This document shows positions 2,432-24,169 of a DNA stretch of 64,000 nucleotides, one piece after another. Both the position numbers and the translations under genes were made by a program. The stretch is taken from the IMG/VR virus record IMGVR_UViG_3300042359_000853, positions 1 through 64,000 of that record. One strand, written 5' to 3'. The notes under the pieces were generated by a model. The model saw only the letters and a program-made list of their open reading frames with translations, made no database searches and was not told the DNA's origin. The stretch's first letter is position 1. Every line of letters starts with the position of its first letter.

Positions 2432-2698
2432 TTATATGCCTAATATTTGATCGATTTTTTCATCTCTTACCTTTGAGAACTTCTTGAAGTTCTTCATTTC
2501 ACGGGTAATTACAAATAATGAAAGGGGAAATCTTCTACCGCTCTTGTTATATAACACTACCATACCAAATGCTATAGGATCATTTTGGTAGCCAGTATAT
2601 TCTTTGAATTGGACCAAATCACCCCTCTTCAATGGTCCGACCAGCATATCTCTTCCTTGGTAGATGAGAGTTTCACCGGGTATAAATTTATTTTCCAT
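2432..2698 (-). CDS. Small hypothetical protein, paralog array member 1 (C-term RDEKIDQIL)
   Basis: Shares GETLIYQG / LKRGDLVQF / RDxKIxxIL layout with neighbours. Confidence 0.75.
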   Translation of the reverse strand: MENKFIPGETLIYQGRDMLVGPLKRGDLVQFKEYTGYQNDPIAFGMVVLYNKSGRRFPLSLFVITREMKNFKKFSKVRDEKIDQILGI

Positions 2699-2936
2699 GT
2701 TCCAATATATCGTTTATTTTGCTATCTCTTACTTTCCAATCCCTTATGAAATAACAAACATCTTGACTAGGTATATAACTTACATTTTTACTCTGTGTAT
2801 ATCTTGATACATACATACCTCCACTTTGAAAGTATTGGATAAACTCTACACGTTCCCCTTTTTTAAGTGTAGTATAAGGTCCTAGTGTCTCTCCTATGAA
2901 AATGAGGATTTCTCCAGTTATGAACTGATGTGACAT
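2688..2936 (-). CDS. Small hypothetical protein, paralog array member 2 (C-term RDSKINDIL)
   Basis: GEILIFIG / LKKGERVEF; TATATTTG box 15 nt upstream. Confidence 0.75.
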   Translation of the reverse strand: MSHQFITGEILIFIGETLGPYTTLKKGERVEFIQYFQSGGMYVSRYTQSKNVSYIPSQDVCYFIRDWKVRDSKINDILEHGK

Positions 2937-2950
2937 ATCTAAATTTTTTA

Positions 2951-2958
2951 CAAATATA
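2951..2958 (-). promoter_or_regulatory. Bacteroidota-type -7 promoter element TATATTTG
   Basis: Matches TAnnTTTG consensus, upstream of ORF 2936(-). Confidence 0.65.
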
Positions 2959-2963
2959 GTTAT

Positions 2964-3218
2964 TTATTTTTGGATTTCTTCAGGGGGTAGTTCTAATATT
3001 TGCGAGATTTTTTCATCTCTTAACTCTTGAATAGTTTTCAAAAAGCAGTCGTCGATAGTGTATAGTTGGTTGGGTTCCCCAATGAGTTCAACCAAAAGCC
3101 TTTTTCCCCGACCGAGGGTATGAAAAAGAACTTCTCTTAATATCACTCGCCGACCTGGTGGAAACCCATTTAATCTTGCTGTTTTGTCTCTCAGTATCAA
3201 TATATCACCTGTTTTCAT
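2964..3218 (-). CDS. Small hypothetical protein, paralog array member 3 (RDEKISQIL)
   Basis: GDILILR / PPGRRVIL / RDEKISQIL. Confidence 0.75.
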   Translation of the reverse strand: MKTGDILILRDKTARLNGFPPGRRVILREVLFHTLGRGKRLLVELIGEPNQLYTIDDCFLKTIQELRDEKISQILELPPEEIQK

Positions 3219-3486
3219 TATCTAATAGAATATTTATTTTTTTTGATCTCCATTCAGATAAGCTGATAAACAATTCAGGTGTAAAAAACTCATCTAAAAG
3301 TTCAAATCCTTGAGGATGAACTTCCCGTCCTACCTGATACACCATTAAATATTGTTTTGCGCTGTGAGTTTTGAGCCTCATCCACTTTCCGAAAAAAATA
3401 ACCTTATCACCGTATTTAAGGTAGGGTGGCTCGTTGATATCTTGACCGATATAAACGATAACATCTCCTCTAAGGGGGGAGTTCAC
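3205..3486 (-). CDS. Small hypothetical protein, paralog array member 4 (RSKKINILL)
   Basis: GDVIVYIG / LKYGDKVIF; GTG start. Confidence 0.7.
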   Translation of the reverse strand: MNSPLRGDVIVYIGQDINEPPYLKYGDKVIFFGKWMRLKTHSAKQYLMVYQVGREVHPQGFELLDEFFTPELFISLSEWRSKKINILLDNENR

Positions 3487-3510
3487 TACTGCTAGTAGGA
3501 AGAATATAGC

Positions 3511-3876
3511 TCATAGTTCTTCCCTGTTTTGGTCGGTTTGGTTACCATCATCCCCTTCATCGGATAGAAGATCTCTTAGCTTACACTCTCTAATGGCTTG
3601 AGTTACTATTTCATCAGAAGCAAATTTAACGTCGTGACCACGGGAATCACAACTATAGACTAATTTACCATCACTAGAATAGTATTCTCTACTCCAAAAT
3701 CCATTAGAATCTCTGAGTAGGTAATTTCTTCCGAGATGATCCCAAAACCATCTAGTGCAAGTACCATCTTCTTCTTCTCTGTAAATAAGTTGGTGGTGCT
3801 CGTTTTGGATATCAAGATTACCATTCACCGAGAAATCCCAATCGAGTAGTTCAGATATTTTAGGCCACGGATTCAT
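3511..3876 (-). CDS. Hypothetical protein with short beta-hairpin-like repeats
   Basis: REEEDGTCTRWFWDHLG / RDSNGFWSREYYSSDG / SCDSRG periodicity; C-term RECKLRDLL. Confidence 0.6.
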   Translation of the reverse strand: MNPWPKISELLDWDFSVNGNLDIQNEHHQLIYREEEDGTCTRWFWDHLGRNYLLRDSNGFWSREYYSSDGKLVYSCDSRGHDVKFASDEIVTQAIRECKLRDLLSDEGDDGNQTDQNREEL

Positions 3877-4301
3877 TTTTGTGGAATTGTAATTATAGTG
3901 CCGCTTTTAAGGCCAAGCTCCCTAGCTAAGTGCCAACAAGAATCTGCCTGGGTCAGGTCACCTTGAACATGGTGGATACTTCCAAGCAGTAGCAAGGCCT
4001 CTGGTGTTGGATACCAAATAAGTGTTTGCTCGACAAGAGCTCTAGCTTCGGTGTATCTACGTTCATAAACCATTTTTTGAGCTCTTACTAAATTTTGAAT
4101 GATTAAATCTGTGGTGAAGTTAAATTTTTCATAAGTAAGTTGACGGGCCAGTGGAGGTATCGTATCCTTGGGTTTTTGTAGAGATGTTGAATCTTCACGT
4201 TTCTCGCGACCCCGCTCGGTATAGATACGAAATCTCGAACCTTGATAGCAAGAGACAAGTAGTAAAAATGAATAGAACAGAAGTGGTAAGAATTTTTTCA
4301 T
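3873..4301 (-). CDS. Putative lipoprotein with TPR-like helices
   Basis: MKKFLPLLFYSFLLLVSC signal and lipobox; YTEARALVEQTL..PEALLLLGSIHHVQGDLTQADSCW TPR pattern. Confidence 0.6.
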   Translation of the reverse strand: MKKFLPLLFYSFLLLVSCYQGSRFRIYTERGREKREDSTSLQKPKDTIPPLARQLTYEKFNFTTDLIIQNLVRAQKMVYERRYTEARALVEQTLIWYPTPEALLLLGSIHHVQGDLTQADSCWHLARELGLKSGTIITIPQK

Positions 4302-4957
4302 GATGGGTCTTGGGATAATATTCTATTTATTCTAGTTTCTCTTCTAAGTTGTAGAGGCATTACTTTTTCTATCATTCGCATAAAAGCTGCTCTTCTAGCC
4401 TCTTCATAACTTTGGAATCTAGGTATTCCATTGAAAAGTTCCGATTTTCTTTGATCCAGAAATTCACGGACTGAACTTTTCATATTCGTCACATGAAAAG
4501 TAAAAAGTTGAATATTAGGCATCCAATCAACTGAATATTTTAGGTAGTGAACTTCTCTGAACCACCAATCGGCAAGTGCGTAAGTGGGGTAATATTCAGA
4601 GTTACCCAAAAAACCAACTTCTTTGAGCTGTTCAAGTAGATCGCTCTCGATCATATCGACTGGTTTGAGTGGCATGTTGTAATTAGAGAGAGAGAGGAGA
4701 TGGTGAGTAAAATGAGATAAGAGGTAGTAAGAACTACCTAAACCTAATAGAGTTGCTAGATTGAAATTTTTCTGGGGATCCTCGTAGCAGGTTATTCCCA
4801 GCATGATGATGGTGATTAGAAGGCTCAAGAGGTCAAAAGCGGGGATATCCCTACCGAATCTTCCGAAAAAAAGATATTCCACGAGTCCAAAAACAAAAAC
4901 AAGTAGGTAAAGTGCTCGTAAATTGGTGAAATGCTCCCGTGATAGAAATCTTTTCAT
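4298..4957 (-). CDS. Membrane protein (N-terminal TM helices; C-term RETRINRIL)
   Basis: Three hydrophobic segments in the first 90 aa. Confidence 0.65.
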   Translation of the reverse strand: MKRFLSREHFTNLRALYLLVFVFGLVEYLFFGRFGRDIPAFDLLSLLITIIMLGITCYEDPQKNFNLATLLGLGSSYYLLSHFTHHLLSLSNYNMPLKPVDMIESDLLEQLKEVGFLGNSEYYPTYALADWWFREVHYLKYSVDWMPNIQLFTFHVTNMKSSVREFLDQRKSELFNGIPRFQSYEEARRAAFMRMIEKVMPLQLRRETRINRILSQDPS

Positions 4958-4970
4958 AGATATTTTTTTA

Positions 4971-5029
4971 CAAAGATAATAAGATTTTCCGGTTTTAGAT
5001 AGTCTTTAGGTAATTTTTTTGTATATTTG
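4971..5029. promoter_or_regulatory. Divergent TAnnTTTG promoter pair
   Basis: TATCTTTG on - at 4971..4978 (13 nt before ATG 4957) and TATATTTG on + at 5022..5029 (11 nt before ATG 5041). Confidence 0.7.
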
Positions 5030-5040
5030 AAAAAAAACTT

Positions 5041-5271
5041 ATGACATTTGTAGAAATAATTGGCTGGCTCTCAACTCTGGTGGTTTTCATTTCATTTTCT
5101 CAAAAATCCATGAAACGACTTAGAGTAGTTTCGATTGCTGCTTGCCTGTTATGGTCTTGGTATGGATATTTAAAATCTGATATGCCCGTTATAGTTACGA
5201 ATATTTCAATTATTTTCATACATATCTCGGCTCTTTATCGTGAAAAAGGTTCAGACGTAACGAGTTCCTGA
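5041..5271 (+). CDS. Small inner-membrane protein (YgjV / PQ-loop-like)
   Basis: EIIGWLSTLVVFISF..MKRLRVVSIAACLLWSWYGYL..PVIVTN; three TM helices. Confidence 0.6.
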   Translation: MTFVEIIGWLSTLVVFISFSQKSMKRLRVVSIAACLLWSWYGYLKSDMPVIVTNISIIFIHISALYREKGSDVTSS

Positions 5272-5652
5272 AATAACTCTAGGTGAAGGTCTTTTTTCTA
5301 TAGCTAAAAAATCTTCATATTGGTGTATGAAACCGGTTTGATTTATGAAATCTAAAAGTTTATCTCTTTGTGTGAGAGTTGTATAATCAAGTAGGGGATC
5401 TAAGTTCTTTATAAAAGGTATATAAAGACCCAAGGCAGAAACATTCCAGAAATTTTCTGTAAATCCTTGAAAATCTAGAGTAATATTTGGTCTTACACCA
5501 GATTCAGACCTAAAAATTATCCGAGTATCTCTACCTAGAAAATCTGAAATATCGCCTGGAAGCTCGTGTGAGTAATCTCCTGATATTAGAACAGTAGCGG
5601 ATGTTCCAATGAAGGGCTCAAGATGATGTCTGTAAATTTCAAAGTTTTTCAT
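5251..5652 (-). CDS. Hypothetical protein
   Basis: 133 aa ORF converging on the previous gene; natural composition. Confidence 0.65.
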   Translation of the reverse strand: MKNFEIYRHHLEPFIGTSATVLISGDYSHELPGDISDFLGRDTRIIFRSESGVRPNITLDFQGFTENFWNVSALGLYIPFIKNLDPLLDYTTLTQRDKLLDFINQTGFIHQYEDFLAIEKRPSPRVISGTRYV

Positions 5653-5717
5653 ATCTAAATATATTAAATATTTCCTGTTTTGTTCGAGTAGTAATCAAAC
5701 TTCTTTTTCTGAGCGTC

Positions 5718-5725
5718 TATAAATA
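5718..5725 (+). promoter_or_regulatory. TATAAATA box (exact T4 late-promoter consensus)
   Basis: 14 nt upstream of ATG 5740. Confidence 0.45.
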
Positions 5726-5739
5726 AGAAAAAAACATTT

Positions 5740-7314
5740 ATGAAACAAAAATTATTACTACTTCTCTTTCTACTAGTAAGTAGTCTGTCGGAAGCTCAAA
5801 ATCTAGTAGATACCGTAAGAACGAATATCACTACCAACACAACCTGGAGACGGGATAGAATTTATCTTATCGAAGGCTATCGGTTTGTAAAAGATGGAGC
5901 TACTCTAACAATCGAGCCAGGCACTACTATTAGAGGTGATAAAGCTTCGAAAGGCACACTTATTATTACAAAGACCGGAAAGATCCTAGCCAACGGAAAT
6001 GATACAATGCCTATTGTATTTACCTCGAATCAACCACAAGGAACTAGAACTTATGGTGACTGGGGAGGTATCGTAATCCTGGGAAACGCACCTATCAATG
6101 TTCCTGGTGGCATAGGTATTATCGAAGGTGGTCTTCTTGGGCAAGATGCTACTTATGGGGGAAATAACCAAGATGATAGTTCAGGAGTTTTTAGGTATGT
6201 TCGTATTGAATACCCAGGCATCGCCTATCAGCCAAACTCTGAAATAAACGGATTAACTCTCGGTGGTGTAGGTCGTAAAACACAAATCGATCACATACAA
6301 GTTAGCTATTCTGGTGATGATGCCTTTGAGTGGTTCGGTGGAAATGTAAATTGTAAATACCTAGTAGCACACAGAGGTTGGGATGACGATTTTGATACTG
6401 ATTTTGGATATTCTGGAAAGGTTCAATTCGCCTTATCAATGAGAGACCCAAATATTTCAGACCAATCCCAATCCAATGGACTTGAGTCTGATAACGATGG
6501 AACCGGAACTTTTAATACACCCTTTACTTCACCTCTATTTTCTAATGTAACTATTATTGGACCTAGAGAGGGTGGTAACCCGGCTTCACTCTACCGTAGA
6601 GCTATGCATCTTCGTAGAAATACCAGAACTTCTATCTATAACTCTCTTTTTACTGGTTATACAACTGGTCTTCATATTGATGGACAAGCATCTCAAGCAG
6701 CAGCTACTCTCGATAGCCTTCAGCTAGAACGTGTTATACTCTGTAATATGCTAAATAACTTCGAGCAAACATCTGGTCAAAATACCTGGCAAGGTATGAA
6801 CTCCTATTTTTTAGATTCAACTCGTCAGAACCAAATTATTGATAGCACATTTCGATTGGGTCTTCGCCCGGGTTACGCAAACTTGGGTAGTCCAGACCTC
6901 GTGCCAGATTCAGGAAGTTTATTGTTGAGTGGTGCTAATTTTACAAATCCCCGATTGAGTGATGGATTTTTTGATACCGTGAGTTTCATTGGCGCTTTTG
7001 GCCTAGTAGATTGGACTAGGGGCTGGTCAAATTTCAATCCAGATACCGTTCATACCTCTGTAGAAGTCGTAAATCGAACCGTAACAAGGGTTTATCCGAA
7101 CCCAGTTACACAAGGTCTATTTACTATTCAGTTAGATGAACTTCCACAAGATGTGCGTGTATTCGATATTCGTGGTAGGGAGGTTCAATCTTCATGGAGT
7201 CAGATCTCTGAAGATGCCATCCGAGTATCTCTGGATACAAATAAAGTTGGTCTAATGACCGTTCTTATTCAAGATAAACTTTCCTTAAAGATATCCAGAA
7301 TAGTAGTTCGGTAA
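5740..7314 (+). CDS. Secreted beta-helix-like protein with T9SS type A C-terminal sorting domain
   Basis: Signal peptide MKQKLLLLLFLLVSSLSEA. Core DDSSGVFRYVRIEYPG..EINGLTLGGVG..DDAFEWFGG resembles a Bacteroidota surface-protein family. C-term VYPNP..VRVFDIRGREV..KISRIVVR. Confidence 0.75.
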   Translation: MKQKLLLLLFLLVSSLSEAQNLVDTVRTNITTNTTWRRDRIYLIEGYRFVKDGATLTIEPGTTIRGDKASKGTLIITKTGKILANGNDTMPIVFTSNQPQGTRTYGDWGGIVILGNAPINVPGGIGIIEGGLLGQDATYGGNNQDDSSGVFRYVRIEYPGIAYQPNSEINGLTLGGVGRKTQIDHIQVSYSGDDAFEWFGGNVNCKYLVAHRGWDDDFDTDFGYSGKVQFALSMRDPNISDQSQSNGLESDNDGTGTFNTPFTSPLFSNVTIIGPREGGNPASLYRRAMHLRRNTRTSIYNSLFTGYTTGLHIDGQASQAAATLDSLQLERVILCNMLNNFEQTSGQNTWQGMNSYFLDSTRQNQIIDSTFRLGLRPGYANLGSPDLVPDSGSLLLSGANFTNPRLSDGFFDTVSFIGAFGLVDWTRGWSNFNPDTVHTSVEVVNRTVTRVYPNPVTQGLFTIQLDELPQDVRVFDIRGREVQSSWSQISEDAIRVSLDTNKVGLMTVLIQDKLSLKISRIVVR

Positions 7315-7334
7315 TTTTTTATCCGGTTTTTTCT

Positions 7335-7371
7335 AGAGGCGTAGGAAATATTTCCTATGCCTCTTTTTTTT
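7335..7371 (+). terminator. Intrinsic terminator
   Basis: agaggcgtaggaa-ata-tttcctatgcctct hairpin followed by T run. Confidence 0.85.
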
Positions 7372-7423
7372 GTTCTAGAGAGTAAACTTCTAAATATATA
7401 AATTTATAATCCTGTCATCTTCG

Positions 7424-7606
7424 GTGAAAGAAAAAATCTTCTCAACTATTGTTTTTACACTAATCTGGTTACTTGTAATCTGGGTATTAAGATTTTATAC
7501 AAATTTAGTTTTTGGAAATCCAGGATTTATAACTAGCTCAATAATAATATTCGTAGGATTTTTACTTGCTCACCTTTTTACGCCTTTACTTACAAAAAAC
7601 GAATAA
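7424..7606 (+). CDS. Small two-TM membrane protein
   Basis: 60 aa, two hydrophobic helices, GTG start. Confidence 0.55.
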   Translation: MKEKIFSTIVFTLIWLLVIWVLRFYTNLVFGNPGFITSSIIIFVGFLLAHLFTPLLTKNE

Positions 7607-7613
7607 CCAAAAA

Positions 7614-8147
7614 ATGCTACTTCGCTCTATTTTTCTTCTGATTTTACTACTTCTTTCTGCCAGAGGCCATTCTCAAATCTATCTTAATGGTGATACAATA
7701 AACGATCAAACTTGTAGAAGAGTTGGTCTTATTCAACTTGATTGGACAGAGACTATCGATACGTCATCTTCGAATGTTATACTCTATTATACGGTTCATA
7801 TTGATAAAATAATCGATGAGAAAAAACAAGAAGAGTTGGATAAGTTTTTAGATAAAAATTTAGTAGGGGGCAGAGGTGATACCCTTGTTTATTATTTTTA
7901 TTACTATAGATATGATCTAGAAACACTTTCATCACTTCTATCTCATTATAGTTTAAAAACTTCACTAGAGGTTAGAAAAATGATGTTTGTAAAAATTGGC
8001 GCTTGGGGTCTGGGCGCTGGAGTTGCCTTTATAAATCCCGTAGCAGGACTTTTAGTTATCTCAGCTGGAGAGATTTGGAGTTTGAAATGTCTAAGGAATA
8101 TTTCTAGAGATAGTATCGAGATGAGTGTCGATGTTCAAGGAAAATGA
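7614..8147 (+). CDS. Exported/membrane hypothetical protein
   Basis: Likely start MLLRSIFLLILLLLSARGHS (signal peptide) at 7614; C-terminal glycine-rich hydrophobic hairpin. Confidence 0.65.
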   Translation: MLLRSIFLLILLLLSARGHSQIYLNGDTINDQTCRRVGLIQLDWTETIDTSSSNVILYYTVHIDKIIDEKKQEELDKFLDKNLVGGRGDTLVYYFYYYRYDLETLSSLLSHYSLKTSLEVRKMMFVKIGAWGLGAGVAFINPVAGLLVISAGEIWSLKCLRNISRDSIEMSVDVQGK

Positions 8148-8148
8148 A

Positions 8149-8237: not shown

Positions 8238-8302
8238 GAATATATAGTAGAAAAAATATAAGTTGATATCAAAGATATAAAAATTTTGATATATAAATAT
8301 GT

Positions 8303-9615: not shown

Positions 9616-9626
9616 GAGTTTATTAT

Positions 9627-12050: not shown

Positions 12051-13928
12051 ATGAAAAAAGACGTAATCATCGGTATTGACCTAGGAACAACTAACTCAGC
12101 GGTAGCTATTGTTGAGGCGGGAGATTCAGTGATCATTCCAAACTCTGAAGGCCGCAGAACAACACCATCGGTCGTTGCCTTCACCGATAAAGACCGAAGA
12201 ATCGGAGATCCTGCTAAAAGACAAGCAGTGACCAATCCCCAAAAAACCATCTACTCTATTAAGAGATTTATTGGTAAGAGCTGGGCAGCATCGAAAGACG
12301 AAGCTGGCAAAGTTCCCTACACGGTGAAATCAAGCTCAAACTCTACACCCGTCGTATCGATTGATGATAGAGATTATACCCCTCAAGAAATCTCAGCGAT
12401 GATCCTTCAGAAAATGAAAAAAACCGCCGAAGATTATCTAGGTTACGAAGTTACACGAGCTGTTATTACCGTTCCTGCTTACTTCGGAGATGCCGAAAGA
12501 GGCGCAACGATGGAAGCCGGTCAAATCGCTGGGCTTAAAGTCGAGAGGATTATCAACGAACCTACAGCAGCTGCCCTGGCCTATGGTTTAGATAAAAAAG
12601 GTCAAGACTCAAAAATCTTGGTTTTCGACTGCGGAGGTGGAACCCACGACGTATCAGTTCTTGAAATTGGTGATGGTGTATTCGAGGTAAAATCAACCGA
12701 TGGTGATACCCATCTAGGTGGTGATGACTTTGATAATGCGATCATTGCCTGGATGACCGGTGAGTTCAAAAGTGACACTGGTATCGATCTAACGAAAGAT
12801 CCAATGGCATTACAACGACTGAAAGACGCAGCTGAAAAAGCAAAGATCGAACTTTCTTCTTCACTTTCAACCGAGGTCAATCTTCCCTATATTACGGTGA
12901 AGGATAACGTTCCTCAACACTTTGTGAAATCTCTTACCCGTGCTAAGTTCGATCAACTTACCAAATCACTCGTTGATAGAGCAGTGGCCTGTGCGAAAAG
13001 TGCTCTAAAATCTGCTGGTCTTAAGCCAAGTGAGATTGATGAAGTAGTTTTAGTAGGTGGTTCTACTCGCATTCCAGCTATTCAAGATGCTGTCGAGAGT
13101 TTTATTGGTAAAAAAGCCAATAAATCTGTAAATCCAGATGAAGTCGTAGCAATGGGAGCAGCTATTCAAGGTGCTGTTCTTACCGGTGATGTTAATGATG
13201 TTCTTCTACTAGACGTTATTCCACTCTCGTTCGGTATTGAAACCATGGGTGGTGTAATGACCAAACTTATCGAGGCCAACACAACTATTCCAGTAAGAAA
13301 GCAGCAAACTTTCTCAACAGCTGCTGATAATCAAAACTCAGTTGAAATCCACGTTCTTCAAGGTGAAAGGCCGATGGCATCAGATAACCGTTCGATAGGC
13401 AGGTTCCATCTTGATGGTATTATGCCAGCTCCGAGGGGTGTTCCACAAATCGAGGTTAGTATTGATATCGACGCTAATGGTATCCTAAGTGTTAAAGCTC
13501 AAGATAAAGCTACTGGTAAAGAAAACAAAATTCGTATCGAAGGTGGTTCTTCTCTAACACCAGAGGAAATCCAACGTATGAAAGACGAGGCTATTCAGAA
13601 CGAGGCTGAGGATAAACGTAAGATGGAAACTGCCGAGCTTGTCAATAAGTGTGATACTCAAGTATTCACTACTAAAAAATCACTCGAAGAGTGGAAGGAC
13701 AAGTTTACACCCGAGCAGCTAGAAGAGCTTCAAAAACTGGTCGGCCAGCTCGAAGAGGCTCTCTCTCAACGAGACGAGACTAGGATGAAAGAAGCTTCGT
13801 CTTCTCTTGAGTCGACTTTCTCCAAAATTTCTACCGAGATTTATTCTAAAATCAGTAGTGAAGAAGGTTCTAGTTCAAGTGGTGTAGAAGATGTAGAATA
13901 TACAACGGTTGAAGATCAAGACAAGTAA
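12051..13928 (+). CDS. dnaK: Chaperone DnaK (Hsp70)
   Basis: [61 protein letters not shown]. Confidence 0.98.
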
Positions 13929-16321: not shown

Positions 16322-17611
16322 TTAGTCATCGACTTCATACCAATCACCAGAAGTAGAAACAAGTTGTCTTTCAGATGAGTCGATAGCTATGTTAGTAAGA
16401 CATTTCTCAGTGAGACTCAAATATTTCATACTATCAACATAAGGATATCTATCAAAATATACTTTTTTAAGATTACATATATAAGTATCTTCTGTTTTTC
16501 TGGTTTTACCGTCCGTCATCATAAGATTAGAACTTGAATCTTGATGGGTTTTGTAAAACCAACCTTTAGATTGAGCAAATTGCTTGAAAAGTTCAATATC
16601 TGAATCGTTGTTTGTGTAAATCCTATCTACAAAGATAGTTCCGTCATTAAGTGTCCAAACAATAGCTCTACCACGAATCTTATTGGATAGATATTTACCA
16701 TCGGATATTCTTCCATTGTTATCATAAAGTATAACCATTTGGCAAACTTCTGGATTTTCGGTGTATATCTTGAAATACTCAGGCCCCTTTTCTTTCATAC
16801 AAGAGTTTCCGAGCTGGCCTAGTTGAGATTCATAATTCTGACTTTTATACCAAAATGCTATTTGATCACCTTTGACAACATCAAATTTAGCGAAAGCTTG
16901 GTTGAAAATATCCCAGGCTGCTTTATACCGGTTGGTAAAAACTTCGATTTCTTGTTCAGTGTGATTGATATTAAGAACTTTGAGAACAGATTTAGCAAAT
17001 TTTCCTACTTTAAAAGTAGCTCTTTGCTCAGTCCAAAGCCTGTCGTATCGATTATCAAAAGGAATAAGACTGTTAATGTTGATAACTTTCTGAACACCAT
17101 TCGAAACAAACTCTTTACCTTGAACTTCACCAATATCAATCAAGGCATATTCTTTTTTACTTGGATTAATACATCGAGCCTTTATTTGGCATTTCATTCC
17201 AGATGAAATTGATGTTGAAACATCACCATCGGTAGGTGTGTAGTTCAATCTTCTGAAAGTAGAAATGTTTTTGTATTCACCATTCTCGTCTTTATTAAAA
17301 GTTAGTAATCCAGACGTGTTGTTGATTATCCAGATCTCTTTTGTTTCAGATAAAATTCTTTCAGCTTTGTTTTGTGGAATATACTCAACATAATCTTTTC
17401 TATCTTTTGTAAGATCAATGTAGTTAGCTGCGTATTCAGCGTCTTTTCCTGATTGAAAAGCTGATAGTATTTCTCTAGCTACTCTATCATCATCTTTGAG
17501 AGAGTTCAAGAGAGAAGTAAAATTTGGTGAAAAATTGAGAGTAGATTCCATGATAAGGTTTTCTAGGAGAATTTCTTCGTTTAAGAACTGGTTGAACTTT
17601 TTGTGTATCAT
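16322..17611 (-). CDS. Conserved phage protein with N-terminal MIHKKFNQFLNEE peptide
   Basis: C-terminal LGNSCM..GRAIVW..FVDRIY motif block; function unknown. Confidence 0.6.
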   Translation of the reverse strand: MIHKKFNQFLNEEILLENLIMESTLNFSPNFTSLLNSLKDDDRVAREILSAFQSGKDAEYAANYIDLTKDRKDYVEYIPQNKAERILSETKEIWIINNTSGLLTFNKDENGEYKNISTFRRLNYTPTDGDVSTSISSGMKCQIKARCINPSKKEYALIDIGEVQGKEFVSNGVQKVININSLIPFDNRYDRLWTEQRATFKVGKFAKSVLKVLNINHTEQEIEVFTNRYKAAWDIFNQAFAKFDVVKGDQIAFWYKSQNYESQLGQLGNSCMKEKGPEYFKIYTENPEVCQMVILYDNNGRISDGKYLSNKIRGRAIVWTLNDGTIFVDRIYTNNDSDIELFKQFAQSKGWFYKTHQDSSSNLMMTDGKTRKTEDTYICNLKKVYFDRYPYVDSMKYLSLTEKCLTNIAIDSSERQLVSTSGDWYEVDD

Positions 17612-17690: not shown

Positions 17691-17903
17691 ATGTTTTCAA
17701 TAGAAGATCTAAATATTTGTATTATTTCTCATAACATATTTATTAAAGACATAAATCTCGGACATAACTTCGATCAAATACACCGGATATCTGTAAAAAG
17801 GGGCAAACCTTCGAAGGAAATCCTAGATGAAATTTGGAAAAAAAAGTTAGCTAAATCAGTTCAACTAAAAAGGGATAGAAGGTTGAAAAAAATACTGAAT
17901 TAA
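17691..17903 (+). CDS. Small basic hypothetical protein (C-term KRDRRLKKILN)
   Basis: Start refined to MFSIED to avoid overlap with 17611(-). Confidence 0.55.
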   Translation: MFSIEDLNICIISHNIFIKDINLGHNFDQIHRISVKRGKPSKEILDEIWKKKLAKSVQLKRDRRLKKILN

Positions 17904-18418: not shown

Positions 18419-18426
18419 ACTAACTT

Positions 18427-18969: not shown

Positions 18970-19000
18970 ATAAAATTTTATTTAAGGGTATATATTATTT

Positions 19001-19921
19001 TCAAGAGGCCATAAACTCACTTCTGAACTTTAGAAGTGCTAAATCTTTTGCTTTACATTCTAGCTCAACATCGATATCGTAACCATAATCATCAAAGTTC
19101 TCAAAAAGATAGTCGGCGTGTGCTTCGAGTTTAGATGATTGATCTTCATGAATTTTTCTAGAAGATGAATGATGACATAGTTGCTTTTCTTGCCAGGTCT
19201 GACGAGCCAACTCGAAAGCTGACCTCTGATCGAGATCATCAGAAAAACAAGCGTGATGAAAAAAATCAAATACAATAGGCGTTCCTATCTTATCCCAAAT
19301 CATGGACTTTAGCATTTGGGTTGAGAACTGATTTTTTGAGTCGTCGTTTTCTACTGTTAGTCGTTTTTTGGTAGTTGCTGATAACCTCTCAAAATTTTGA
19401 CAAAATCTCTCGGCTGCTTCTTCTCTGCTGGGTTTGGTTACACCAACATGAACATTGATTGAATAGTAGGTCGATGCCTCGAGACCCATGAGATCCATTA
19501 GCTGTGAATGTTTATCGAGTTCGTCGATTGTTTTTTCTACTACATCTGGATTTTGACTAGCTAATACACAAAACGGTGGTGCGTGAAACGATAATCTCAT
19601 ACCGTGTAGCTTGGCAAAATCACCAGCAGATTTTAGAAGAGCTTTTATCCTATCAAATCTAGGTAATGTCGTTACATCGTAATGTGTAAGCCAAGGGAAC
19701 ATCTCTGAGGACATTCTATATACAAAGATGTTGTTTTGTAAATTATACTCAAGGATTTTGATTAAATCTTCTAAATTTTTGGTAGCTAGTTCGCTAACAC
19801 CTTCAAGACCTTTCGTGTCAAAAGTTTTTTTGACCATACCACGATTCACTGATACTTGATCTACTTTTTTGACACCTTCGTTGATACCAAGGCAGATACA
19901 GCAATATCCTATTTTTGACAT
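19001..19921 (-). CDS. uvsE: UV-damage endonuclease
   Basis: IGYCCI, YRMSSEMFP, RLSFHAPPFCVLAS, NVHVG, LTVENDD, PIVFDFFHH, HSSS, AHADY, ELECKAKD. Confidence 0.92.
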   Translation of the reverse strand: MSKIGYCCICLGINEGVKKVDQVSVNRGMVKKTFDTKGLEGVSELATKNLEDLIKILEYNLQNNIFVYRMSSEMFPWLTHYDVTTLPRFDRIKALLKSAGDFAKLHGMRLSFHAPPFCVLASQNPDVVEKTIDELDKHSQLMDLMGLEASTYYSINVHVGVTKPSREEAAERFCQNFERLSATTKKRLTVENDDSKNQFSTQMLKSMIWDKIGTPIVFDFFHHACFSDDLDQRSAFELARQTWQEKQLCHHSSSRKIHEDQSSKLEAHADYLFENFDDYGYDIDVELECKAKDLALLKFRSEFMAS

Positions 19922-19935
19922 TCTTTATTTTTTTA

Positions 19936-19943
19936 CAAAGATA
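19936..19943 (-). promoter_or_regulatory. TATCTTTG promoter element
   Basis: TAnnTTTG 14 nt upstream of uvsE. Confidence 0.65.
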
Positions 19944-19954
19944 TGAAAAAATAT

Positions 19955-20536
19955 TTAATTATTTACTCTTTCGACATCATCAAGTGGTATTTCTATAAAG
20001 TTTTCTCTACCAAAAATTTTCACAGAAACTTTAACTGAATTCTTTTGTCGGTTCATTTCTTTCACATCACCTTCAAATCCAGAAAATGGACCACCTAAAA
20101 TACGAACTCTTTCACCTGATGAGTATTCCAAAGCCGTAGCTGTATCTGTTTCGTCAATTTTAGCTCTCATTTTCTCAAGTTCATACTGCTTAACCCAGAT
20201 AGGGTTTCCAGCGGCATCTTTAAGAAGACCAGCAGCTCCGGGCGTAGATTTTACCCAGTATTCAAGCTCACCTACATATTTAGTTTCTACGAAGATATAG
20301 CCAGGAAAAAGAACTTTTTCTCTCATGATTCTTTGGCCATTTCTATTGGTGATTGTTTTTTCTGTAGGATAAAAAGCTTCTATAATCGGTAGATCACCTC
20401 TGTCTTTATCTCGGTTCATTCTTTCGAGTAGGGTTCTTTCTCTGCCAGATTGAACTCTGAGCGTATACCAATTGGTTTTTTTCGGATCAATTTCTGATGT
20501 ATCTACACCGTCTATTCTGGATTTTGTATTTGACAT
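19955..20536 (-). CDS. nusG: Transcription elongation factor NusG
   Basis: WYTLRVQSGRE, KVLFPGYIFVE, KOW motif GERVRILGGPFSGFEG..VKVSVKIFGRE. Confidence 0.92.
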   Translation of the reverse strand: MSNTKSRIDGVDTSEIDPKKTNWYTLRVQSGRERTLLERMNRDKDRGDLPIIEAFYPTEKTITNRNGQRIMREKVLFPGYIFVETKYVGELEYWVKSTPGAAGLLKDAAGNPIWVKQYELEKMRAKIDETDTATALEYSSGERVRILGGPFSGFEGDVKEMNRQKNSVKVSVKIFGRENFIEIPLDDVERVNN

Positions 20537-20560
20537 ATATTTTTTGTTTTTATTTTTTTT

Positions 20561-21370
20561 TTAATTTGAATATCTTTCACGATAAAAACTGTAGATTGGA
20601 TCAATTTCTTTCGGGTAGTTATATGGTTCACTAAAGAGTATATTCGTTACGCCCCAAGCTTGGTTGAAACAACCATCATCTTTGAAATAATGTAATCTAG
20701 ATGGTAGTTGTCTAAGAGTTATCTTAAACTGCATCAGGTGTGTTTTTAGTATATTCTCGGGTGGAAACATGTAGGCACCTTCTTTAAGGTATCTAGAAAG
20801 ATAAATGAATAAAGAGCTATAATAATTCATATTTTTCTGAGAGCCATAAGCAAACTGATCTGGGGGACCGCCATTATTTAACCATTTATCGTTGAATGTA
20901 CAACCCCAAACTAGATTCAAATAACCATTGATTTCCAGATCAGGGAATGGCTCGAAGTAAATATCAGTTCTTGTTCTAATTACTATATCATAGTTTTTGT
21001 CTTGACACAATGAATTACATTTCATAACTTTATACCAAAGATAAAAAAATCGACATTCTCTGGTCGACTCTAGTAAATCAGGAGTCAAAGGCCACATATC
21101 ATTTATGCTAAATTTTTCTATGATTTCTTCACGAAATACACTTACAACCGAACTTTCAAAATTATGTGGATTTTCCCATTCACATTTTATTGGATTTAAT
21201 TTGTAGAATAGTTCTTCTTGTGTGATATCTTCTGAAAGTTTTTCCTCTTCGGTTCTCTCCCAAAAACTACCATAAACATCCAAATTGTATTCTTCGGTAA
21301 TTTTTTTCCAGTAATCAAAACTTTTGTGCATTTCTCTGATTTGACCAGAAAAACAAATAGCAATTTTCAT
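20561..21370 (-). CDS. Putative glycosyltransferase-like protein
   Basis: MKIAICFSGQIR..YDIVIRTRTDI..DQFAYGS..PPENILKTHL. Confidence 0.6.
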   Translation of the reverse strand: MKIAICFSGQIREMHKSFDYWKKITEEYNLDVYGSFWERTEEEKLSEDITQEELFYKLNPIKCEWENPHNFESSVVSVFREEIIEKFSINDMWPLTPDLLESTRECRFFYLWYKVMKCNSLCQDKNYDIVIRTRTDIYFEPFPDLEINGYLNLVWGCTFNDKWLNNGGPPDQFAYGSQKNMNYYSSLFIYLSRYLKEGAYMFPPENILKTHLMQFKITLRQLPSRLHYFKDDGCFNQAWGVTNILFSEPYNYPKEIDPIYSFYRERYSN

Positions 21371-21774
21371 AATAATTTTTCCATTTCTGTTTTTTTTACT
21401 CTTTTGAACTCCTTAATTATAATATCAAAACTTTCTGGATAAAGTTGCTTAATACAATCCAATTCTGATTTCGTTAAATCATGTTTTAACATAATTTCAT
21501 CATCAAATTGCTCAGTTTTTTTATGTGAAGAATTTGGATTTTTTTTCCAAAACCAGGCCTCGTAACCACGACCTCTAACTAAGTGATGCCAAGTATCCAT
21601 AGCTGAAGATTTATCTACGTTGTCTTGGGACAAAATTGAAGACCACTCTGGATATTTCTTTGCGAACATTCTATTTATTATAAAATAGTGAGCTTCTTTG
21701 TCTTCACGTGTTATATTACTCCACATCTGTGAGCTCCCAAAAAGCGCTTTTGTGAAATCTAAAAGGTTAGTCAT
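21367..21774 (-). CDS. T4 gp62-like clamp-loader small subunit (tentative)
   Basis: YFIINRMFAK resembles the FxINRxLS motif; near replication genes. Confidence 0.4.
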   Translation of the reverse strand: MTNLLDFTKALFGSSQMWSNITREDKEAHYFIINRMFAKKYPEWSSILSQDNVDKSSAMDTWHHLVRGRGYEAWFWKKNPNSSHKKTEQFDDEIMLKHDLTKSELDCIKQLYPESFDIIIKEFKRVKKTEMEKLL

Positions 21775-22141
21775 TTTCTAAAATTTTTTCTATTAAAACA
21801 TCTCTTAAAAGACGGGGATTATTTATTCTTAGATAAATCTTTCCGAGTGGAGTCCCAAAAAAACTTTTATTACTCCCGAAAACACCATCACCAACTTGGT
21901 GAACTACATCTGAAAATTCATTCATAGATTTTTCGATTGATTTAATATTTGCTATAGTAAAATCAGACCAAAGTTCCCAAAAATAAACACAATCTTGAAC
22001 ATCGTTGTATCTATCTGGATGTTTGGATTCAGGCCACTGATTTAAGGTCTGTGACCAAACAAAAATAGAATAATAATTTTTAATACGCGCTTTATTTTGG
22101 GTGTAATGGTAAAAAAGTTGGCATCTTTCTGATGTAATCAT
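21767..22141 (-). CDS. Hypothetical protein (C-term RDVLIEKIL)
   Basis: 124 aa ORF. Confidence 0.65.
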   Translation of the reverse strand: MITSERCQLFYHYTQNKARIKNYYSIFVWSQTLNQWPESKHPDRYNDVQDCVYFWELWSDFTIANIKSIEKSMNEFSDVVHQVGDGVFGSNKSFFGTPLGKIYLRINNPRLLRDVLIEKILEND

Positions 22142-22639
22142 CTAGTTTAATATTTTATTGATTTGTTCTTCTCTAAATAAATCTGGATTCACAATTCGGT
22201 GGAAGATAGATGAAAAAGTGGTATCAACTAGATCAGGTGCTAAAAAGTTACCGGAGGATTTTTTATCTGAAATGATTAAATTTCCATCTTCTAGTTCATA
22301 TTCGAATGTTCCTGTTTCGTAGTTGAACCATTCATTTACGACTTTAGAACGAGATTGGTTTTGATTGGTGATATTTTTATTCAGATTTTCTAAAATAGTT
22401 GTGATATTTGGGACATTTTTTTTCTCAGCTTTTGAAAGTGTATCTATCCATCTTTCATAAAATTCAACAAAAACACAGAGGTATTGGTAGTTACTCATTT
22501 TTTTCTTGTTCATGTTTGGCACTCTATCTGAGATAAAACCATACCATTTGAAGAGTGATTCTTTAACTATTTTATCTCCTATGAAGGAGGTAAGGTTTTG
22601 CAACTTTAACCAATTGATAAATCTCTCATCTATAATCAT
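22142..22639 (-). CDS. Hypothetical protein (C-term REEQINKILN)
   Basis: 165 aa ORF. Confidence 0.65.
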   Translation of the reverse strand: MIIDERFINWLKLQNLTSFIGDKIVKESLFKWYGFISDRVPNMNKKKMSNYQYLCVFVEFYERWIDTLSKAEKKNVPNITTILENLNKNITNQNQSRSKVVNEWFNYETGTFEYELEDGNLIISDKKSSGNFLAPDLVDTTFSSIFHRIVNPDLFREEQINKILN

Positions 22640-23597
22640 GGACTTGGTTCATTTTTTCTACGATTTGTCTTGGAAGTGTATCTAGATCGAGATGAATCAG
22701 TTTCCAGTTCTCCCGTATATTATGTGAAATCTGAGGTATAGTTGATTTTGATAATCTTTTTTTCTCACAAATAATATCGGCTAAGTTCTCGAATAAATCA
22801 GGATCACTAATAGAAATTTGACCAAAAGATTGCTCGTATCTTTTGTAGATATCTTTTGCGCCTTTTGGTCCAATACCACGGATCTTACCGAACTTCTCGA
22901 CTTGCCAAACCGATTTAATGTTATCAGAGTTATCACCGGATAGTATTTTTGTGATCAGAGATTCAACTGGATCAGCTACTGACGTTTGGTATTTGTCGGT
23001 AAAGTTTTTGAGTAGTTTTATAAAATCTTCAGAATAATCCTGATCGAAGATAGTTTGCTCTTCGGCTTTTTGTGTAACACGATTCAAGAATACTTGAAAG
23101 TTTTTTGGTAGGAATATTTTTTGTTTATTGATAATCTCGTTACTCATTACGTTGATGTAAGGTGGATCAAGACCATACCTGATAAGCTGCTTTATATCGT
23201 GATCGTTCGAGATAATAACATTCGAGATATTTTTCTCGTTTGATTTGTTGATAATATAGCAGATCCAATCATCACCCTCTATTGAAGGATACTCGAGAAC
23301 GTGCACACCTTGTAGGTTTTCCTTGAAGTTTTTGTAAGTTTCATGAACAAAACTCCAGTCTATATCATTATTCTTTTTTCTGGTTGCTTTGTATTCTTGG
23401 TTTAATTTCTTTCTCCAAGATTTTTCTTTTGAATCTGATACAAGATAAATCTTAGTGAAAGGATACCATCTTTTGTAAGATTGGAGTGATTTCTCAAGAG
23501 CTCTTTGAAGCTCACCGAAAAGAAGATTATTTTTATGAAGTGTAAAAACACATTTGTTTAAAAGGTAGTTCCCATCAATCAATAAATTGACTAGCAT
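22626..23597 (-). CDS. rnh: 5'-3' exonuclease / T4 RNase H-like
   Basis: LLIDGN, DSKEKSWRK..YKATR, EGDDWI, ISNDHDIKQL, GDNSDNI acidic clusters. Confidence 0.85.
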   Translation of the reverse strand: MLVNLLIDGNYLLNKCVFTLHKNNLLFGELQRALEKSLQSYKRWYPFTKIYLVSDSKEKSWRKKLNQEYKATRKKNNDIDWSFVHETYKNFKENLQGVHVLEYPSIEGDDWICYIINKSNEKNISNVIISNDHDIKQLIRYGLDPPYINVMSNEIINKQKIFLPKNFQVFLNRVTQKAEEQTIFDQDYSEDFIKLLKNFTDKYQTSVADPVESLITKILSGDNSDNIKSVWQVEKFGKIRGIGPKGAKDIYKRYEQSFGQISISDPDLFENLADIICEKKRLSKSTIPQISHNIRENWKLIHLDLDTLPRQIVEKMNQVHDYR

Positions 23598-23647
23598 AGT
23601 CTTTTGATTATTTTTTTTAGACTAGCTATTTTCCAAACCTTGAACGA

Positions 23648-23776
23648 TTATACTCGTCTCAAGTAGTCACTACCTCTTATTACCCAACAAGGAGTATTAT
23701 TTATTGAACCGAGAATGTAAAGTTGCACTTGACCAAAAAGATAGGATATTGATTTCTTACTTCGTGGATTTGGCAT
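23648..23776 (-). CDS. Uncalled 42-aa small ORF
   Basis: MPNPRSKKSISYLFGQVQLYILGSINNTPCWVIRGSDYLRRV fills an otherwise empty gap in a leftward operon. Confidence 0.35.
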   Translation of the reverse strand: MPNPRSKKSISYLFGQVQLYILGSINNTPCWVIRGSDYLRRV

Positions 23777-23800
23777 AATAACTAATTTGATATTATATAC

Positions 23801-24169
23801 CTAAATATGAACTTTGTTTTTATCCGATAATATCTGCTCAATCTTTTTATCTCTGTTTACAATCCTTTTCATATCTTTAAGATAATCAGAAAAACTTCTA
23901 TCTAGGAACTCTAAATAAATTGGATTCTCTTCTATGAATTCTAACATCCTCTCTAAGCCATATTTTTTTATAAACCAAACGCACATGTTGTTTTGCCAAT
24001 CGTCATTCACTAAAATATCCGTTCCTGGTATCGTAATTTTTGATCCGAAGACAGGAGATCCTAAAGATATATTATTGTTGGATACACCTCCAGTAGTAAT
24101 AGTAGTTGAAATACCAGGATATGTAACTGTGTAAGTGTTGTTGGAAGACGATGAGATTATGTTGAACAT
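23801..24169 (-). CDS. Hypothetical protein (C-term RDKKIEQIL)
   Basis: Ser/Thr-rich N-terminus. Confidence 0.65.
   Translation of the reverse strand: MFNIISSSSNNTYTVTYPGISTTITTGGVSNNNISLGSPVFGSKITIPGTDILVNDDWQNNMCVWFIKKYGLERMLEFIEENPIYLEFLDRSFSDYLKDMKRIVNRDKKIEQILSDKNKVHI

What the first reader, a model, noticed from the sequence alone, without database searches (positions are those of the whole stretch)
2432..24169. C-terminal R-D/E-x-K/R-I-x-x-I-L tag on about 10 small unrelated ORFs
Seen at or near the C-terminus: RDEKIDQIL (2432), RDSKINDIL (2688), RDEKISQIL (2964), RSKKINILL (3205), RECKLRDLL (3511), RETRINRIL (4298), RDRRLKKIL (17691), RDVLIEKIL (21767), REEQINKIL (22142), RDKKIEQIL (23801). 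The bodies differ (soluble, membrane, repeat). None of the tagged proteins has the N-terminal head-type leader, and several lie behind host-type TAnnTTTG promoters. Inference: a second address system (degron, docking helix for a phage or host hub protein, or oligomerisation zipper) for early accessory proteins. I know of no assigned function.
Basis: partly seen in the sequence, partly recalled or inferred. Interest (0 to 1): 0.7.

Follow-up and report, generated by a model that had tools for sequence, protein, structure and literature searches.

The report
Shared C-terminal tag on megaphage proteins
Ten small genes in this giant-phage fragment end in the same nine-residue helix, the local sample of an apparently undescribed C-terminal tag carried by up to one in six proteins of related huge phages; its partner is unknown.

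Summary
All ten ORFs end in R-[DES]-x-[KRQL]-[ILV]-x-x-[IL]-L, 1-17 residues before the stop. A matrix trained only on two related phages finds 13 C-terminal and 3 interior hits in this genome (odds ratio 64, p=1e-13).

The window is the start of a 227-kb fragment of a T4-like jumbo phage, probably of a Bacteroidota host. In its 640-kb relatives LR756502.1 and LR745206.1, 158 of 982 and 140 of 947 ORFs carry the tag. Variants occur in LR756504.1 and in two IMG/VR genomes. LR756501.1 and twelve Bacteroidota genomes show no excess.

The tagged bodies are almost all unrelated. Orthologues keep the tag, and codon use points to selection on the amino acids. One conserved family shows the tag as an appended helix end. 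Tagged genes are mostly early, and tagged membrane proteins place the tag in the cytoplasm.

So it is a portable cytoplasmic docking or recognition peptide. Its partner is unresolved. My first choice is Clp-type proteolysis (0.3), because most tag-bearing phages encode a ClpC-like unfoldase, but there are exceptions. The second is sliding-clamp docking as in T4 (0.2). I found no published description.

The parts
2432..2698 (-). 88-aa tagged ORF with an SH3-like body, last gene of the operon. Tag RDEKIDQIL at 2441-2467, then GI and the stop.
   Evidence: matrix score 19.6 bits
2688..2936 (-). 82-aa tagged ORF, paralogue of 2432-2698. Tag RDSKINDIL at 2703-2729.
   Evidence: 16.3 bits
2964..3218 (-). 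84-aa tagged ORF. Tag RDEKISQIL at 2994-3020, followed by a 9-aa acidic tail.
   Evidence: 27.4 bits
3205..3486 (-). 93-aa tagged ORF, paralogue of 2688-2936. Tag RSKKINILL at 3223-3249.
   Evidence: 16.4 bits
3511..3876 (-). 121-aa tagged ORF. Tag RECKLRDLL at 3565-3591, followed by a 17-aa acidic tail.
   Evidence: 16.7 bits
4298..4957 (-). 219-aa tagged membrane protein with two predicted TM segments, N-in and C-in. Tag RETRINRIL at 4316-4342. First gene of the operon.
   Evidence: 20.3 bits
4971..4978 (-). Host-type (Bacteroidota) TAnnTTTG promoter box, 21 nt upstream of the ATG of 4298-4957. It heads the operon 4957 to 2432, which holds six tagged genes.
17691..17903 (+). 70-aa tagged ORF (the longest frame starts at 17496). 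Tag RDRRLKKIL at 17871-17897. It lies behind a phage-type TATATATA motif.
   Evidence: 24.3 bits
21767..22141 (-). 124-aa tagged ORF. Tag RDVLIEKIL at 21779-21805. It lies downstream of the 5'-3' exonuclease gene.
   Evidence: 13.9 bits
22142..22639 (-). 165-aa tagged ORF. Tag REEQINKIL at 22148-22174. It has a tagged homologue in LR756502.1.
   Evidence: 18.5 bits
23801..24169 (-). 122-aa tagged ORF. Tag RDKKIEQIL at 23828-23854.
   Evidence: 20.7 bits

Best explanation
The motif is a portable C-terminal recognition peptide. It is about 10-15 residues long, with the core R-x-x-K-h-x-x-h-h (h = hydrophobic), and it forms the exposed end of a terminal helix. During evolution it has been kept on, or appended to, many unrelated and mostly early phage proteins, and it works in the host cytoplasm.

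Shown: the motif is modular, conserved as amino acids, specific to a clade, found mostly in early transcription units, and cytoplasmic in topology.

Inferred: all tagged proteins are read by one shared partner. That partner handles them transiently, which is why more than 100 clients can share it.

The mechanism I commit to is a degron-like tag. It hands early proteins to a Clp-type AAA+ unfoldase and protease, so that a whole class of early proteins can be cleared or remodelled together. The unfoldase would be the phage's own N-domain-less ClpC-like ATPase, which carries a ClpP-docking loop and would work with phage or host ClpP. Where the phage lacks it, a host protease would serve.

I put the general claim (a docking tag for a shared partner) at about 0.75. 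I put the specific Clp/degron reading at about 0.3.
For: Tag reality and modularity:
- 158 of 982 and 140 of 947 ORFs are tagged in LR756502.1 and LR745206.1. Odds ratios against interior positions are 37 and 49.
- 172 tagged bodies fall into 163 BLAST clusters.
- 57 of 61 orthologue pairs keep the tag at 41% body identity.
- In a DUF932-like family, 77 of 84 homologues keep the tag, while the distant PF06067 members end about 15 residues earlier.
- In the AF2 model (mean pLDDT 90.7) the tag is the end of helix 260-289. Confidence dips there to 73-78, which is compatible with exposure.
- Codon use at the tag's R, D and N positions equals genome use.

Early expression: tagged genes sit behind host-type promoters with odds ratios of 4.3 and 5.0.

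Cytoplasmic location: tagged single-pass proteins are N-out, C-in.

Clp link:
- G000, LR756502.1, LR745206.1, LR756504.1 and five IMG/VR genomes that are at least 91% complete all carry the tag. All encode a ClpC-like ATPase without an N domain and with a [LV]GF loop.
- ClpP paralogues and ClpS are present in the three tagged LR genomes and absent from the tagless LR756501.1. The ATPase of LR756501.1 is ClpB-like, with an N domain and no loop.
- The phage also encodes a tmRNA.
Against: The link to phage Clp genes is not strict, and it is confounded by shared ancestry.
- G008 and G019 carry the tag but have no ClpP.
- G012 has tags but no ATPase was found.
- G026 and G031 are complete genomes of 640 and 676 kb. 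In the short loci read, they hold arrays with a variant tag ending in I-F-[GD]-[DE], yet they have no ClpP and no Hsp100 ATPase.
- The phage ClpS keeps the residues that bind N-degrons (my comparison with E. coli ClpS from memory, on the sequence). It is therefore not a likely reader of a C-terminal tag.
- Known Clp degrons are unstructured and non-polar at the very end. This tag is helical, has an invariant R and a dominant K, has no flexible linker before it, and in this genome is followed by 1-17 polar residues.
- No structural test succeeded. The complex job gave no answer.
Confidence: 0.3

Rival explanations
1. Sliding-clamp docking. The tag is an expanded version of the T4-type C-terminal clamp-binding epitope, a PIP-box-like h-x-x-h-h helix. 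It tethers many accessory proteins to the phage clamp, or the host clamp, on DNA.
For: - In T4, three unrelated proteins (gp43, gp55, gp33) share an interchangeable C-terminal clamp epitope (PMC2988020). The tails read here are SLDFLFG and SLDFLYEAND.
- The tag has PIP-box spacing: a polar residue at +1 and hydrophobic residues at +4, +7 and +8.
- The polymerase tails of LR756502.1 and LR745206.1 share the skeleton R-x-x-x-h-x-x-h-h-G. Only 4 of 824 and 3 of 807 untagged ORFs have it.
- In G026 and G031 the tags end in I-F-[GD]-[DE] and the polymerase ends in S-I-F-D-F.
- In LR756504.1 the tags end in L-L and the polymerase in L-S-L-F.
- Several tagged genes lie among replication genes: a 5'-3' exonuclease at 22626-23597 and gp32.
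Against: - The polymerase tails score -13 bits with the tag matrix, at about the median rank. In T4 the shared epitopes are 'highly similar'.
- The main tag type has no aromatic residue and carries basic rather than acidic invariant residues.
- 16% of all ORFs would compete with the polymerase for the clamp, among them membrane proteins, a riboflavin kinase and a BtpA-like protein.
- The tagless LR756501.1 still has a polymerase tail of the clamp-epitope kind.
- No gp45 or gp55 homologue could be found by sequence.
- The similarity was noticed after the fact.
Confidence: 0.2
2. Address label. The helix targets proteins to a phage-built structure such as a replication compartment, a scaffold, a condensate or the procapsid interior. 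Encapsulin cargo peptides, microcompartment encapsulation peptides and the T4 capsid-targeting sequence work this way.
For: - A short terminal amphipathic helix on unrelated cargo is exactly the anatomy of those systems (from established knowledge, not tested here).
- The scale (5-16% of ORFs, up to half of the ORFs in some arrays) fits a sorting signal.
- The consensus varies with lineage, which fits co-evolution with a phage-encoded receptor.
Against: - Tagged genes are enriched in early, host-promoter units rather than late ones.
- About 9% are membrane-anchored, so they cannot be packaged.
- There is no flexible linker before the tag.
- No shell or compartment gene was identified.
- A separate N-terminal leader class already exists in this genome.
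Confidence: 0.15
3. Oligomerisation zipper or chaperone handle. Either the helices pair with each other, or they recruit the phage DnaK/DnaJ/GrpE system to fast-evolving small proteins.
For: - The tag has an amphipathic face (hydrophobic at -1, +4, +7, +8) and forms the end of a long helix.
- DnaK, DnaJ and GrpE are encoded in the window.
- GrpE is absent from the tagless LR756501.1.
Against: - Two and a half helical turns are too short for a stable zipper.
- Promiscuous pairing of more than 100 proteins seems harmful.
- Acidic or polar residues at +1, +5 and +6 do not fit the DnaK binding motif (from established knowledge).
- DnaK and DnaJ are also present in the tagless LR756501.1.
- The four-chain complex prediction gave no answer and counts neither way.
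Confidence: 0.12
4. By-product of nucleotide-level constraints at gene ends, such as an A-rich leader for the next gene, a coupling signal or a recombination site. On this reading it is not a protein signal.
For: - Tagged genes overlap the next gene more often than untagged ones (45% against 23%).
- Codons at +3, +4, +7 and +8 lean towards A-ending forms.
Against: - About 40% of tagged genes have no close downstream gene. This includes 2432-2698, the last gene of its operon, and 17691-17903, which faces a convergent gene.
- R, D and N codons follow genome usage, and I/L and K/R/Q substitute for each other.
- The motif is strictly in frame.
- A composition bias cannot produce an invariant R at a fixed register.
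Confidence: 0.03

Closest known systems
T4 sliding-clamp-binding C-terminal epitope of gp43, gp55 and gp33
   Same: It occurs in a T4-like phage lineage. It is a short, portable C-terminal peptide shared by unrelated proteins, and it uses a hydrophobic triad with PIP-like spacing.
   Different: T4 has three carriers; here there are ten to about 160 per genome. The T4 epitope is aromatic and acidic and sits behind a flexible linker. This tag is aliphatic with an invariant R and a dominant K, and it continues a helix. The phages' own polymerase tails do not score as tags.
C-terminal degrons and adaptor tethers of Clp proteases (ssrA tag, MuA tail, SspB ClpX-binding tail)
   Same: It is a genetically portable C-terminal peptide that marks many unrelated proteins for one AAA+ machine. 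Most tag-bearing phages encode a ClpP-docking unfoldase, and this genome also encodes ClpS and a tmRNA.
   Different: This tag is encoded in the gene, not added by tmRNA. It is helical and charged rather than an unstructured non-polar end. Its distance to the C-terminus varies from 0 to 17 residues. Two tag-bearing genomes lack any phage Clp gene.
Terminal targeting peptides: T4 capsid-targeting sequence, encapsulin cargo-loading peptides, microcompartment encapsulation peptides
   Same: It is a short terminal amphipathic segment acting as an address on unrelated cargo.
   Different: The T4 sequence is N-terminal and is cleaved. The others sit behind flexible linkers and serve a handful of cargo proteins. 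Here the carriers are mostly early proteins and some are membrane-anchored.
Shared motifs of diversifying effector repertoires (oomycete RxLR, Plasmodium PEXEL, poxvirus PRANC/F-box)
   Same: One short conserved motif is kept under strong selection on hundreds of fast-diverging, otherwise unrelated small proteins arranged in arrays near genome ends.
   Different: Those are eukaryotic systems with a known trafficking or ubiquitin-ligase logic. This is an analogy only. No phage counterpart is known to me.

Membership tests
T4-type clamp-binding C-terminal epitope | Located at or near the extreme C-terminus | tested here: met
   The stop lies 0-3 residues after the 9-mer in 130 of 158 tags in LR756502.1, and 1-17 residues after it in this genome.
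T4-type clamp-binding C-terminal epitope | Hydrophobic-acidic, aromatic core such as LDFLF/Y | tested here: not met
   The main tag type has I/L only, with basic R at 0 and K at +3. T4 tails were read. Only the variant in G026/G031 ends in F plus acidic residues.
T4-type clamp-binding C-terminal epitope | The same motif sits on the phage's own DNA polymerase tail | tested here: inconclusive
   The skeleton R-x-x-x-h-x-x-h-h-G is shared and rare (4 of 824 untagged ORFs), but the tails score -13 bits with the tag matrix.
T4-type clamp-binding C-terminal epitope | Binds the sliding clamp | not testable with these tools
   No gp45 or gp55 homologue was found.
PIP box (Q-x-x-[ILM]-x-x-[FY]-[FY]) | Consensus residues and spacing | tested here: not met
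   The spacing fits. However, Q is replaced by D/N/E/K, and both aromatic positions are aliphatic or Gly.
C-terminal Clp degron (ssrA-like) | Non-polar residues at the free C-terminus | tested here: inconclusive
   LR756504.1 tags end in L-L at the stop, and 43 of 158 LR756502.1 tags have Gly at +8, mostly G-I at the stop. Most others end in a polar residue. In this genome tails of 1-17 residues follow the tag.
C-terminal Clp degron (ssrA-like) | Co-occurrence with a cognate unfoldase and protease | tested here: inconclusive
   Nine tag-bearing genomes have the ClpC-like ATPase with a ClpP loop. G026, G031 and G012 do not.
C-terminal Clp degron (ssrA-like) | Tag-dependent degradation | not testable with these tools
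   This needs half-life assays.
T4 capsid-targeting sequence | N-terminal leader removed by the prohead protease, on late virion proteins | tested here: not met
   The tag is C-terminal. Carriers are enriched in early units and some are membrane proteins.
Encapsulin or microcompartment targeting peptides | Terminal amphipathic helix behind a flexible linker | tested here: not met
   The helix is present. There is no enrichment of G/P/S/N/T at -20 to -6 (0.249 against 0.269 in the bodies).
Extracytoplasmic sorting signals (T9SS C-terminal domain, sortase-type) | N-terminal signal peptide plus a C-terminal sorting domain | tested here: not met
   No cleavable signal peptide was seen on the tagged proteins with a hydrophobic segment. 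Tagged single-pass proteins are N-out, C-in. The tag has only 9-15 residues.
Any curated protein family (Pfam, PHROGs) | A profile match covering the tag | tested here: not met
   There was no significant hit for the ten window proteins. The 52 tagged LR756502.1 proteins gave only scattered hits, each family in a single protein.

The most novel reading that the evidence does not exclude
A clade of huge T4-like phages of Bacteroidota uses a linear C-terminal 'postcode' to route 100 or more early proteins to one phage-specified machine or place. That could be a class-wide timed destruction system, or an import or docking signal for a phage-built compartment. It would be a virus-encoded protein-sorting code with lineage-specific dialects that co-evolve with their reader.
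Probability: 0.25. Interest if true: 0.95.

Novelty: new variant of a known kind. Interest (0 to 1): 0.8.

Why it matters
Most genes of huge phages are unannotated. A tag that marks 5-16% of them gives a first handle on this dark matter. It defines a functional class of early, cytoplasmic, rapidly diversifying proteins that can be listed from sequence alone. It also offers a 10-residue bait for finding the shared partner.

If the partner is a protease, this would be the first proteome-scale, gene-encoded degron system in a virus of bacteria. If it is the clamp or a compartment, it would show a new way for phages to organise the infected cell.

The peptide might also become a portable tag for Bacteroidota. 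The question is directly testable with peptides, reporters and metagenome-scale profiling.

Tried and rejected
- Profile searches on the tagged proteins (Pfam, PHROGs): nothing relevant.
- ESM Atlas and the 5.8-billion-protein search with 2432-2698: only viral hypotheticals and two near-identical sequences.
- DNA-level repeat or translational-coupling signal: rejected.
- Export signal: rejected on topology.
- Mimicry of a host motif: twelve Bacteroidota genomes give 6 pattern hits against 2 in the control, which is chance level.
- TPR lipoprotein 3873-4301 as receptor: it has no homologue in the related phages.
- DnaK and DnaJ as tag-specific partners: they are also present in the tagless LR756501.1.
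- ClpS as reader: by my comparison with E. coli ClpS (from memory), its N-degron pocket residues look conserved. It is also missing from tag-bearing G018, G019 and G021.
- Strict co-occurrence with ClpP: it fails in G008, G019, G026 and G031.
- Phyletic profiling for a receptor: 52 candidates, too many to decide. They include ClpP x3, ClpS, PrkA, SpoVR, RNase R, NAMPT and GrpE.
- tmRNA tag peptides of G000 and LR756504.1: they are not tag-like.
- Four-chain complex prediction of tagged proteins: no answer, so it is not evidence either way.
- Search for gp55 and gp45 homologues: empty.
- 42168-42929 as a clamp candidate: it is a head-tail adaptor.
- Fold search with the DUF932-like model: no significant match.

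Full report
WHAT THE WINDOW IS. The window is the first 64 kb of a single 227,583-bp contig with 33% G+C. It is an IMG/VR virus record that CheckV rates 39% complete. It encodes a T4-type major capsid protein, portal, large terminase and tail sheath, and gp32 and a 5'-3' exonuclease. Its nearest records are uncultured huge phages. LR756502.1 (642 kb) and LR745206.1 (635 kb) are closest. LR756501.1 (735 kb) and LR756504.1 (636 kb) are more distant. A secreted protein at 5740-7314, whose C-terminus looks by eye like a T9SS sorting domain, has its cellular homologues mainly in Bacteroidota, with some in Ignavibacteria. Early promoters are of the Bacteroidota TAnnTTTG type. The host is therefore most likely a member of the Bacteroidota.

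THE OBSERVATION. All ten peptides exist as quoted, each 1-17 residues before a stop. A strict regular expression over all six-frame ORFs of the genome gives 13 hits, and 11 of them are C-terminal. I then trained a 14-column matrix only on the two closest relatives and applied it to this genome. At 12 bits or more it finds 13 hits in the last 17 residues and 3 in 65,051 interior positions (odds ratio 64, p=1.4e-13). Four more tagged ORFs lie outside the window. Two details of the finding need correction. First, 2432, 2688 and 3205 are detectable paralogues with a small beta-rich body, 2964 probably is too, and 21767/22142 may be. Second, six tagged genes form one operon behind a single host-type promoter box at 4971-4978.

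THE REAL SCALE. I fetched four related huge phages whole and called ORFs the same way in each. In LR756502.1, 158 of 982 ORFs end in R-[DNE]-x-K-[LI]-[ND]-x-[IL]-[LG]. In 81 of these the stop falls exactly one residue after the 9-mer. K at +3 (101 of 158) and N/D at +5 were not imposed by my search pattern. In LR745206.1, 140 of 947 ORFs are tagged. The odds ratios for C-terminal against interior positions are 37 and 49.

LR756504.1 has its own dialect, R-K-x-[IK]-I-x-x-L-[LI] followed directly by the stop. R stands at -9 in 114 of its ORFs. LR756501.1 shows no excess of any variant (odds ratio 1.4, p=0.49). A DNA pattern for R-D-x-K-L-[ND]-x-L-G-I-stop finds only 19 stretches in all of IMG/VR. 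Most lie on contigs of 77-476 kb, and in their flanks up to half of the ORFs are tagged. Two complete genomes related to LR756501.1, G026 and G031, hold arrays with a third dialect, R-x-x-K-[IL]-x-x-I-F-[GD]-[DE]. This was read in 3-kb loci only, so its scale in those genomes was not measured. Twelve Bacteroidota genomes give chance-level counts.

IT IS A PROTEIN-LEVEL, MODULAR TAG.
- The 172 tagged bodies from two genomes fall into 163 BLAST clusters. Almost none has a Pfam or PHROG family. The exceptions include a riboflavin kinase and a BtpA-like protein.
- Of 61 tagged LR756502.1 proteins with a homologue in LR745206.1, 57 pairs are tagged on both sides. Body identity averages 41%. The L-G-I and I-L-x endings swap between orthologues.
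- Homologues in LR756501.1 lack the tag.
- The conserved 290-aa protein at 137404-138276 has 84 homologues, and 77 keep the tag. The most distant ones, which carry Pfam DUF932, stop about 15 residues earlier, so the tag is an added extension.
- In an AlphaFold model of that protein (mean pLDDT 90.7) the tag is the end of a 30-residue C-terminal helix, and confidence drops there to 73-78.
- Codons for R, D and N in the tag follow genome usage. There is only a mild preference for A-ending codons near the gene end.
- About 40% of tagged genes have no close downstream gene. The motif is therefore not a coupling or recombination signal.

WHERE AND WHEN IT ACTS. Structural genes are preceded by a TAATATATA-like motif. 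Tagged genes are four to five times more likely than untagged genes to lie in units headed by the host-type box. That promoter classification is crude. About 9% of tagged proteins have a membrane segment. The single-pass ones have the positive charges after the segment, so the tagged C-terminus faces the cytoplasm. This excludes an export signal, and for those proteins it excludes packaging.

WHO READS IT. More than 100 clients per genome argue for a partner that handles them transiently or that offers many sites.

I looked for phage genes present in the three tagged LR genomes and absent from the tagless one. There are 52. They include three ClpP paralogues, ClpS, GrpE, PrkA and SpoVR. Nine tag-bearing genomes (the window's own, the three tagged LR genomes and five near-complete IMG/VR genomes) encode a ClpC-like double AAA+ ATPase that lacks the N domain and has a [LV]GF ClpP-docking loop. 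The tagless phage has instead a ClpB-like protein with an N domain and no loop. This makes a degron reading attractive.

The link breaks in several genomes, however. G008 and G019 have no ClpP. G012 has tags but no ATPase. G026 and G031 have no Clp gene at all. The association is also confounded by relatedness.

A second lead is the T4 precedent. The unrelated gp43, gp55 and gp33 share an interchangeable C-terminal clamp-binding epitope (PMC2988020). The tag has PIP-box spacing, and the polymerase tails of these phages share its skeleton. In each dialect they also loosely resemble the local tag ending. Against this, the polymerase tails score at the median with the tag matrix. I could not find the clamp. 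It is also hard to see why a sixth of the proteome should sit on the clamp.

The one complex prediction, four different tagged proteins together, returned no answer and is not evidence.

VERDICT. The finding is a real tag, conserved across a clade of phages, and I found no description of it. Neither a review of jumbo-phage genomics (PMC7824862) nor my literature searches mention it. The general reading, a portable cytoplasmic docking or recognition peptide for a shared partner, I hold at about 0.75. For the partner I rank the options as follows: Clp-type proteolysis 0.3, sliding clamp 0.2, address to a phage structure 0.15, zipper or chaperone 0.12, nucleotide-level by-product 0.03. The rest is unknown.

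Noticed in passing
window 320-1699, 1878-2348, 16322-17611, 27194-27487, 43081-43641, 49389-50000, 49976-50269: A separate set of ORFs starts with a leader like MK.(L/I)K.(F/Y)(E/N).F, which resembles the T4 capsid-targeting sequence. None of them carries the C-terminal tag.
   Followed up: no
window 12051-13928 (DnaK), 37141-37764 (GrpE), 40563-41585 (DnaJ): The phage encodes an Hsp70 system. GrpE was confirmed by Pfam. DnaK and DnaJ were recognised by eye from the sequence. DnaK and DnaJ have homologues in all four related huge phages, while GrpE has none in the tagless LR756501.1.
   Followed up: partly
G000 72471-74600 and 214660-214944; LR756502.1 58622-59143, 112104-112634 and 364599-365000: Phage-encoded Clp system. 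It comprises a ClpC-like ATPase without an N domain but with an LGF ClpP-docking loop and a UVR motif, a ClpS-like adaptor, and, in relatives, two or three ClpP paralogues.
   Followed up: yes
G000 172754-173103 (-); LR756504.1 280507-280863 (-): Phage-encoded tmRNAs (Rfam RF00023, 65 bits) with unusually long predicted tag peptides of about 25-29 residues, ending in L-A-V-A and A-V-A-A.
   Followed up: partly
whole genome, e.g. upstream of G000 188039-189697 (capsid) and 183476-185182 (portal): Two promoter classes are visible. A TAATATATA-like motif lies 20-45 nt upstream of structural and many other genes. The host-type TAnnTTTG box lies upstream of a minority, including the tagged operon.
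   Followed up: partly
LR756502.1 253853-255391 and 120483-121907; L383 559-2526 (G026): The family B DNA polymerase is split into two distant genes in these phages. The C-terminal piece in G026 is 170 residues longer than in G031, through an insertion right after the catalytic DTDS motif. It looks like an intein.
   Followed up: no
window 5740-7314: A 524-aa secreted protein whose C-terminus looks by eye like a T9SS sorting domain. It is 42-57% identical to proteins of Sphingobacteriales, Flavobacteriales, Bacteroidales and Ignavibacteria. It is probably a host-derived gene and a clue to the host.
   Followed up: partly
LR756502.1 273831-275756, 519947-521446, 71411-73351 and 133119-134534: The tag-bearing LR genomes also share PrkA, SpoVR, an RNase R/II-like enzyme and a nicotinamide phosphoribosyltransferase. 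All are absent from LR756501.1.
   Followed up: no
G000 95431-95829: A strong tag match (16.5 bits) lies 74 residues before the C-terminus of a 132-aa ORF. It may be a tagged gene fused to the following one.
   Followed up: no
window 19955-20536, 22626-23597, 50343-51302 and 42168-42929: The window also encodes a NusG-like protein, a T4 RNase H-type 5'-3' exonuclease, gp32 single-strand binding protein and a head-tail adaptor.
   Followed up: partly
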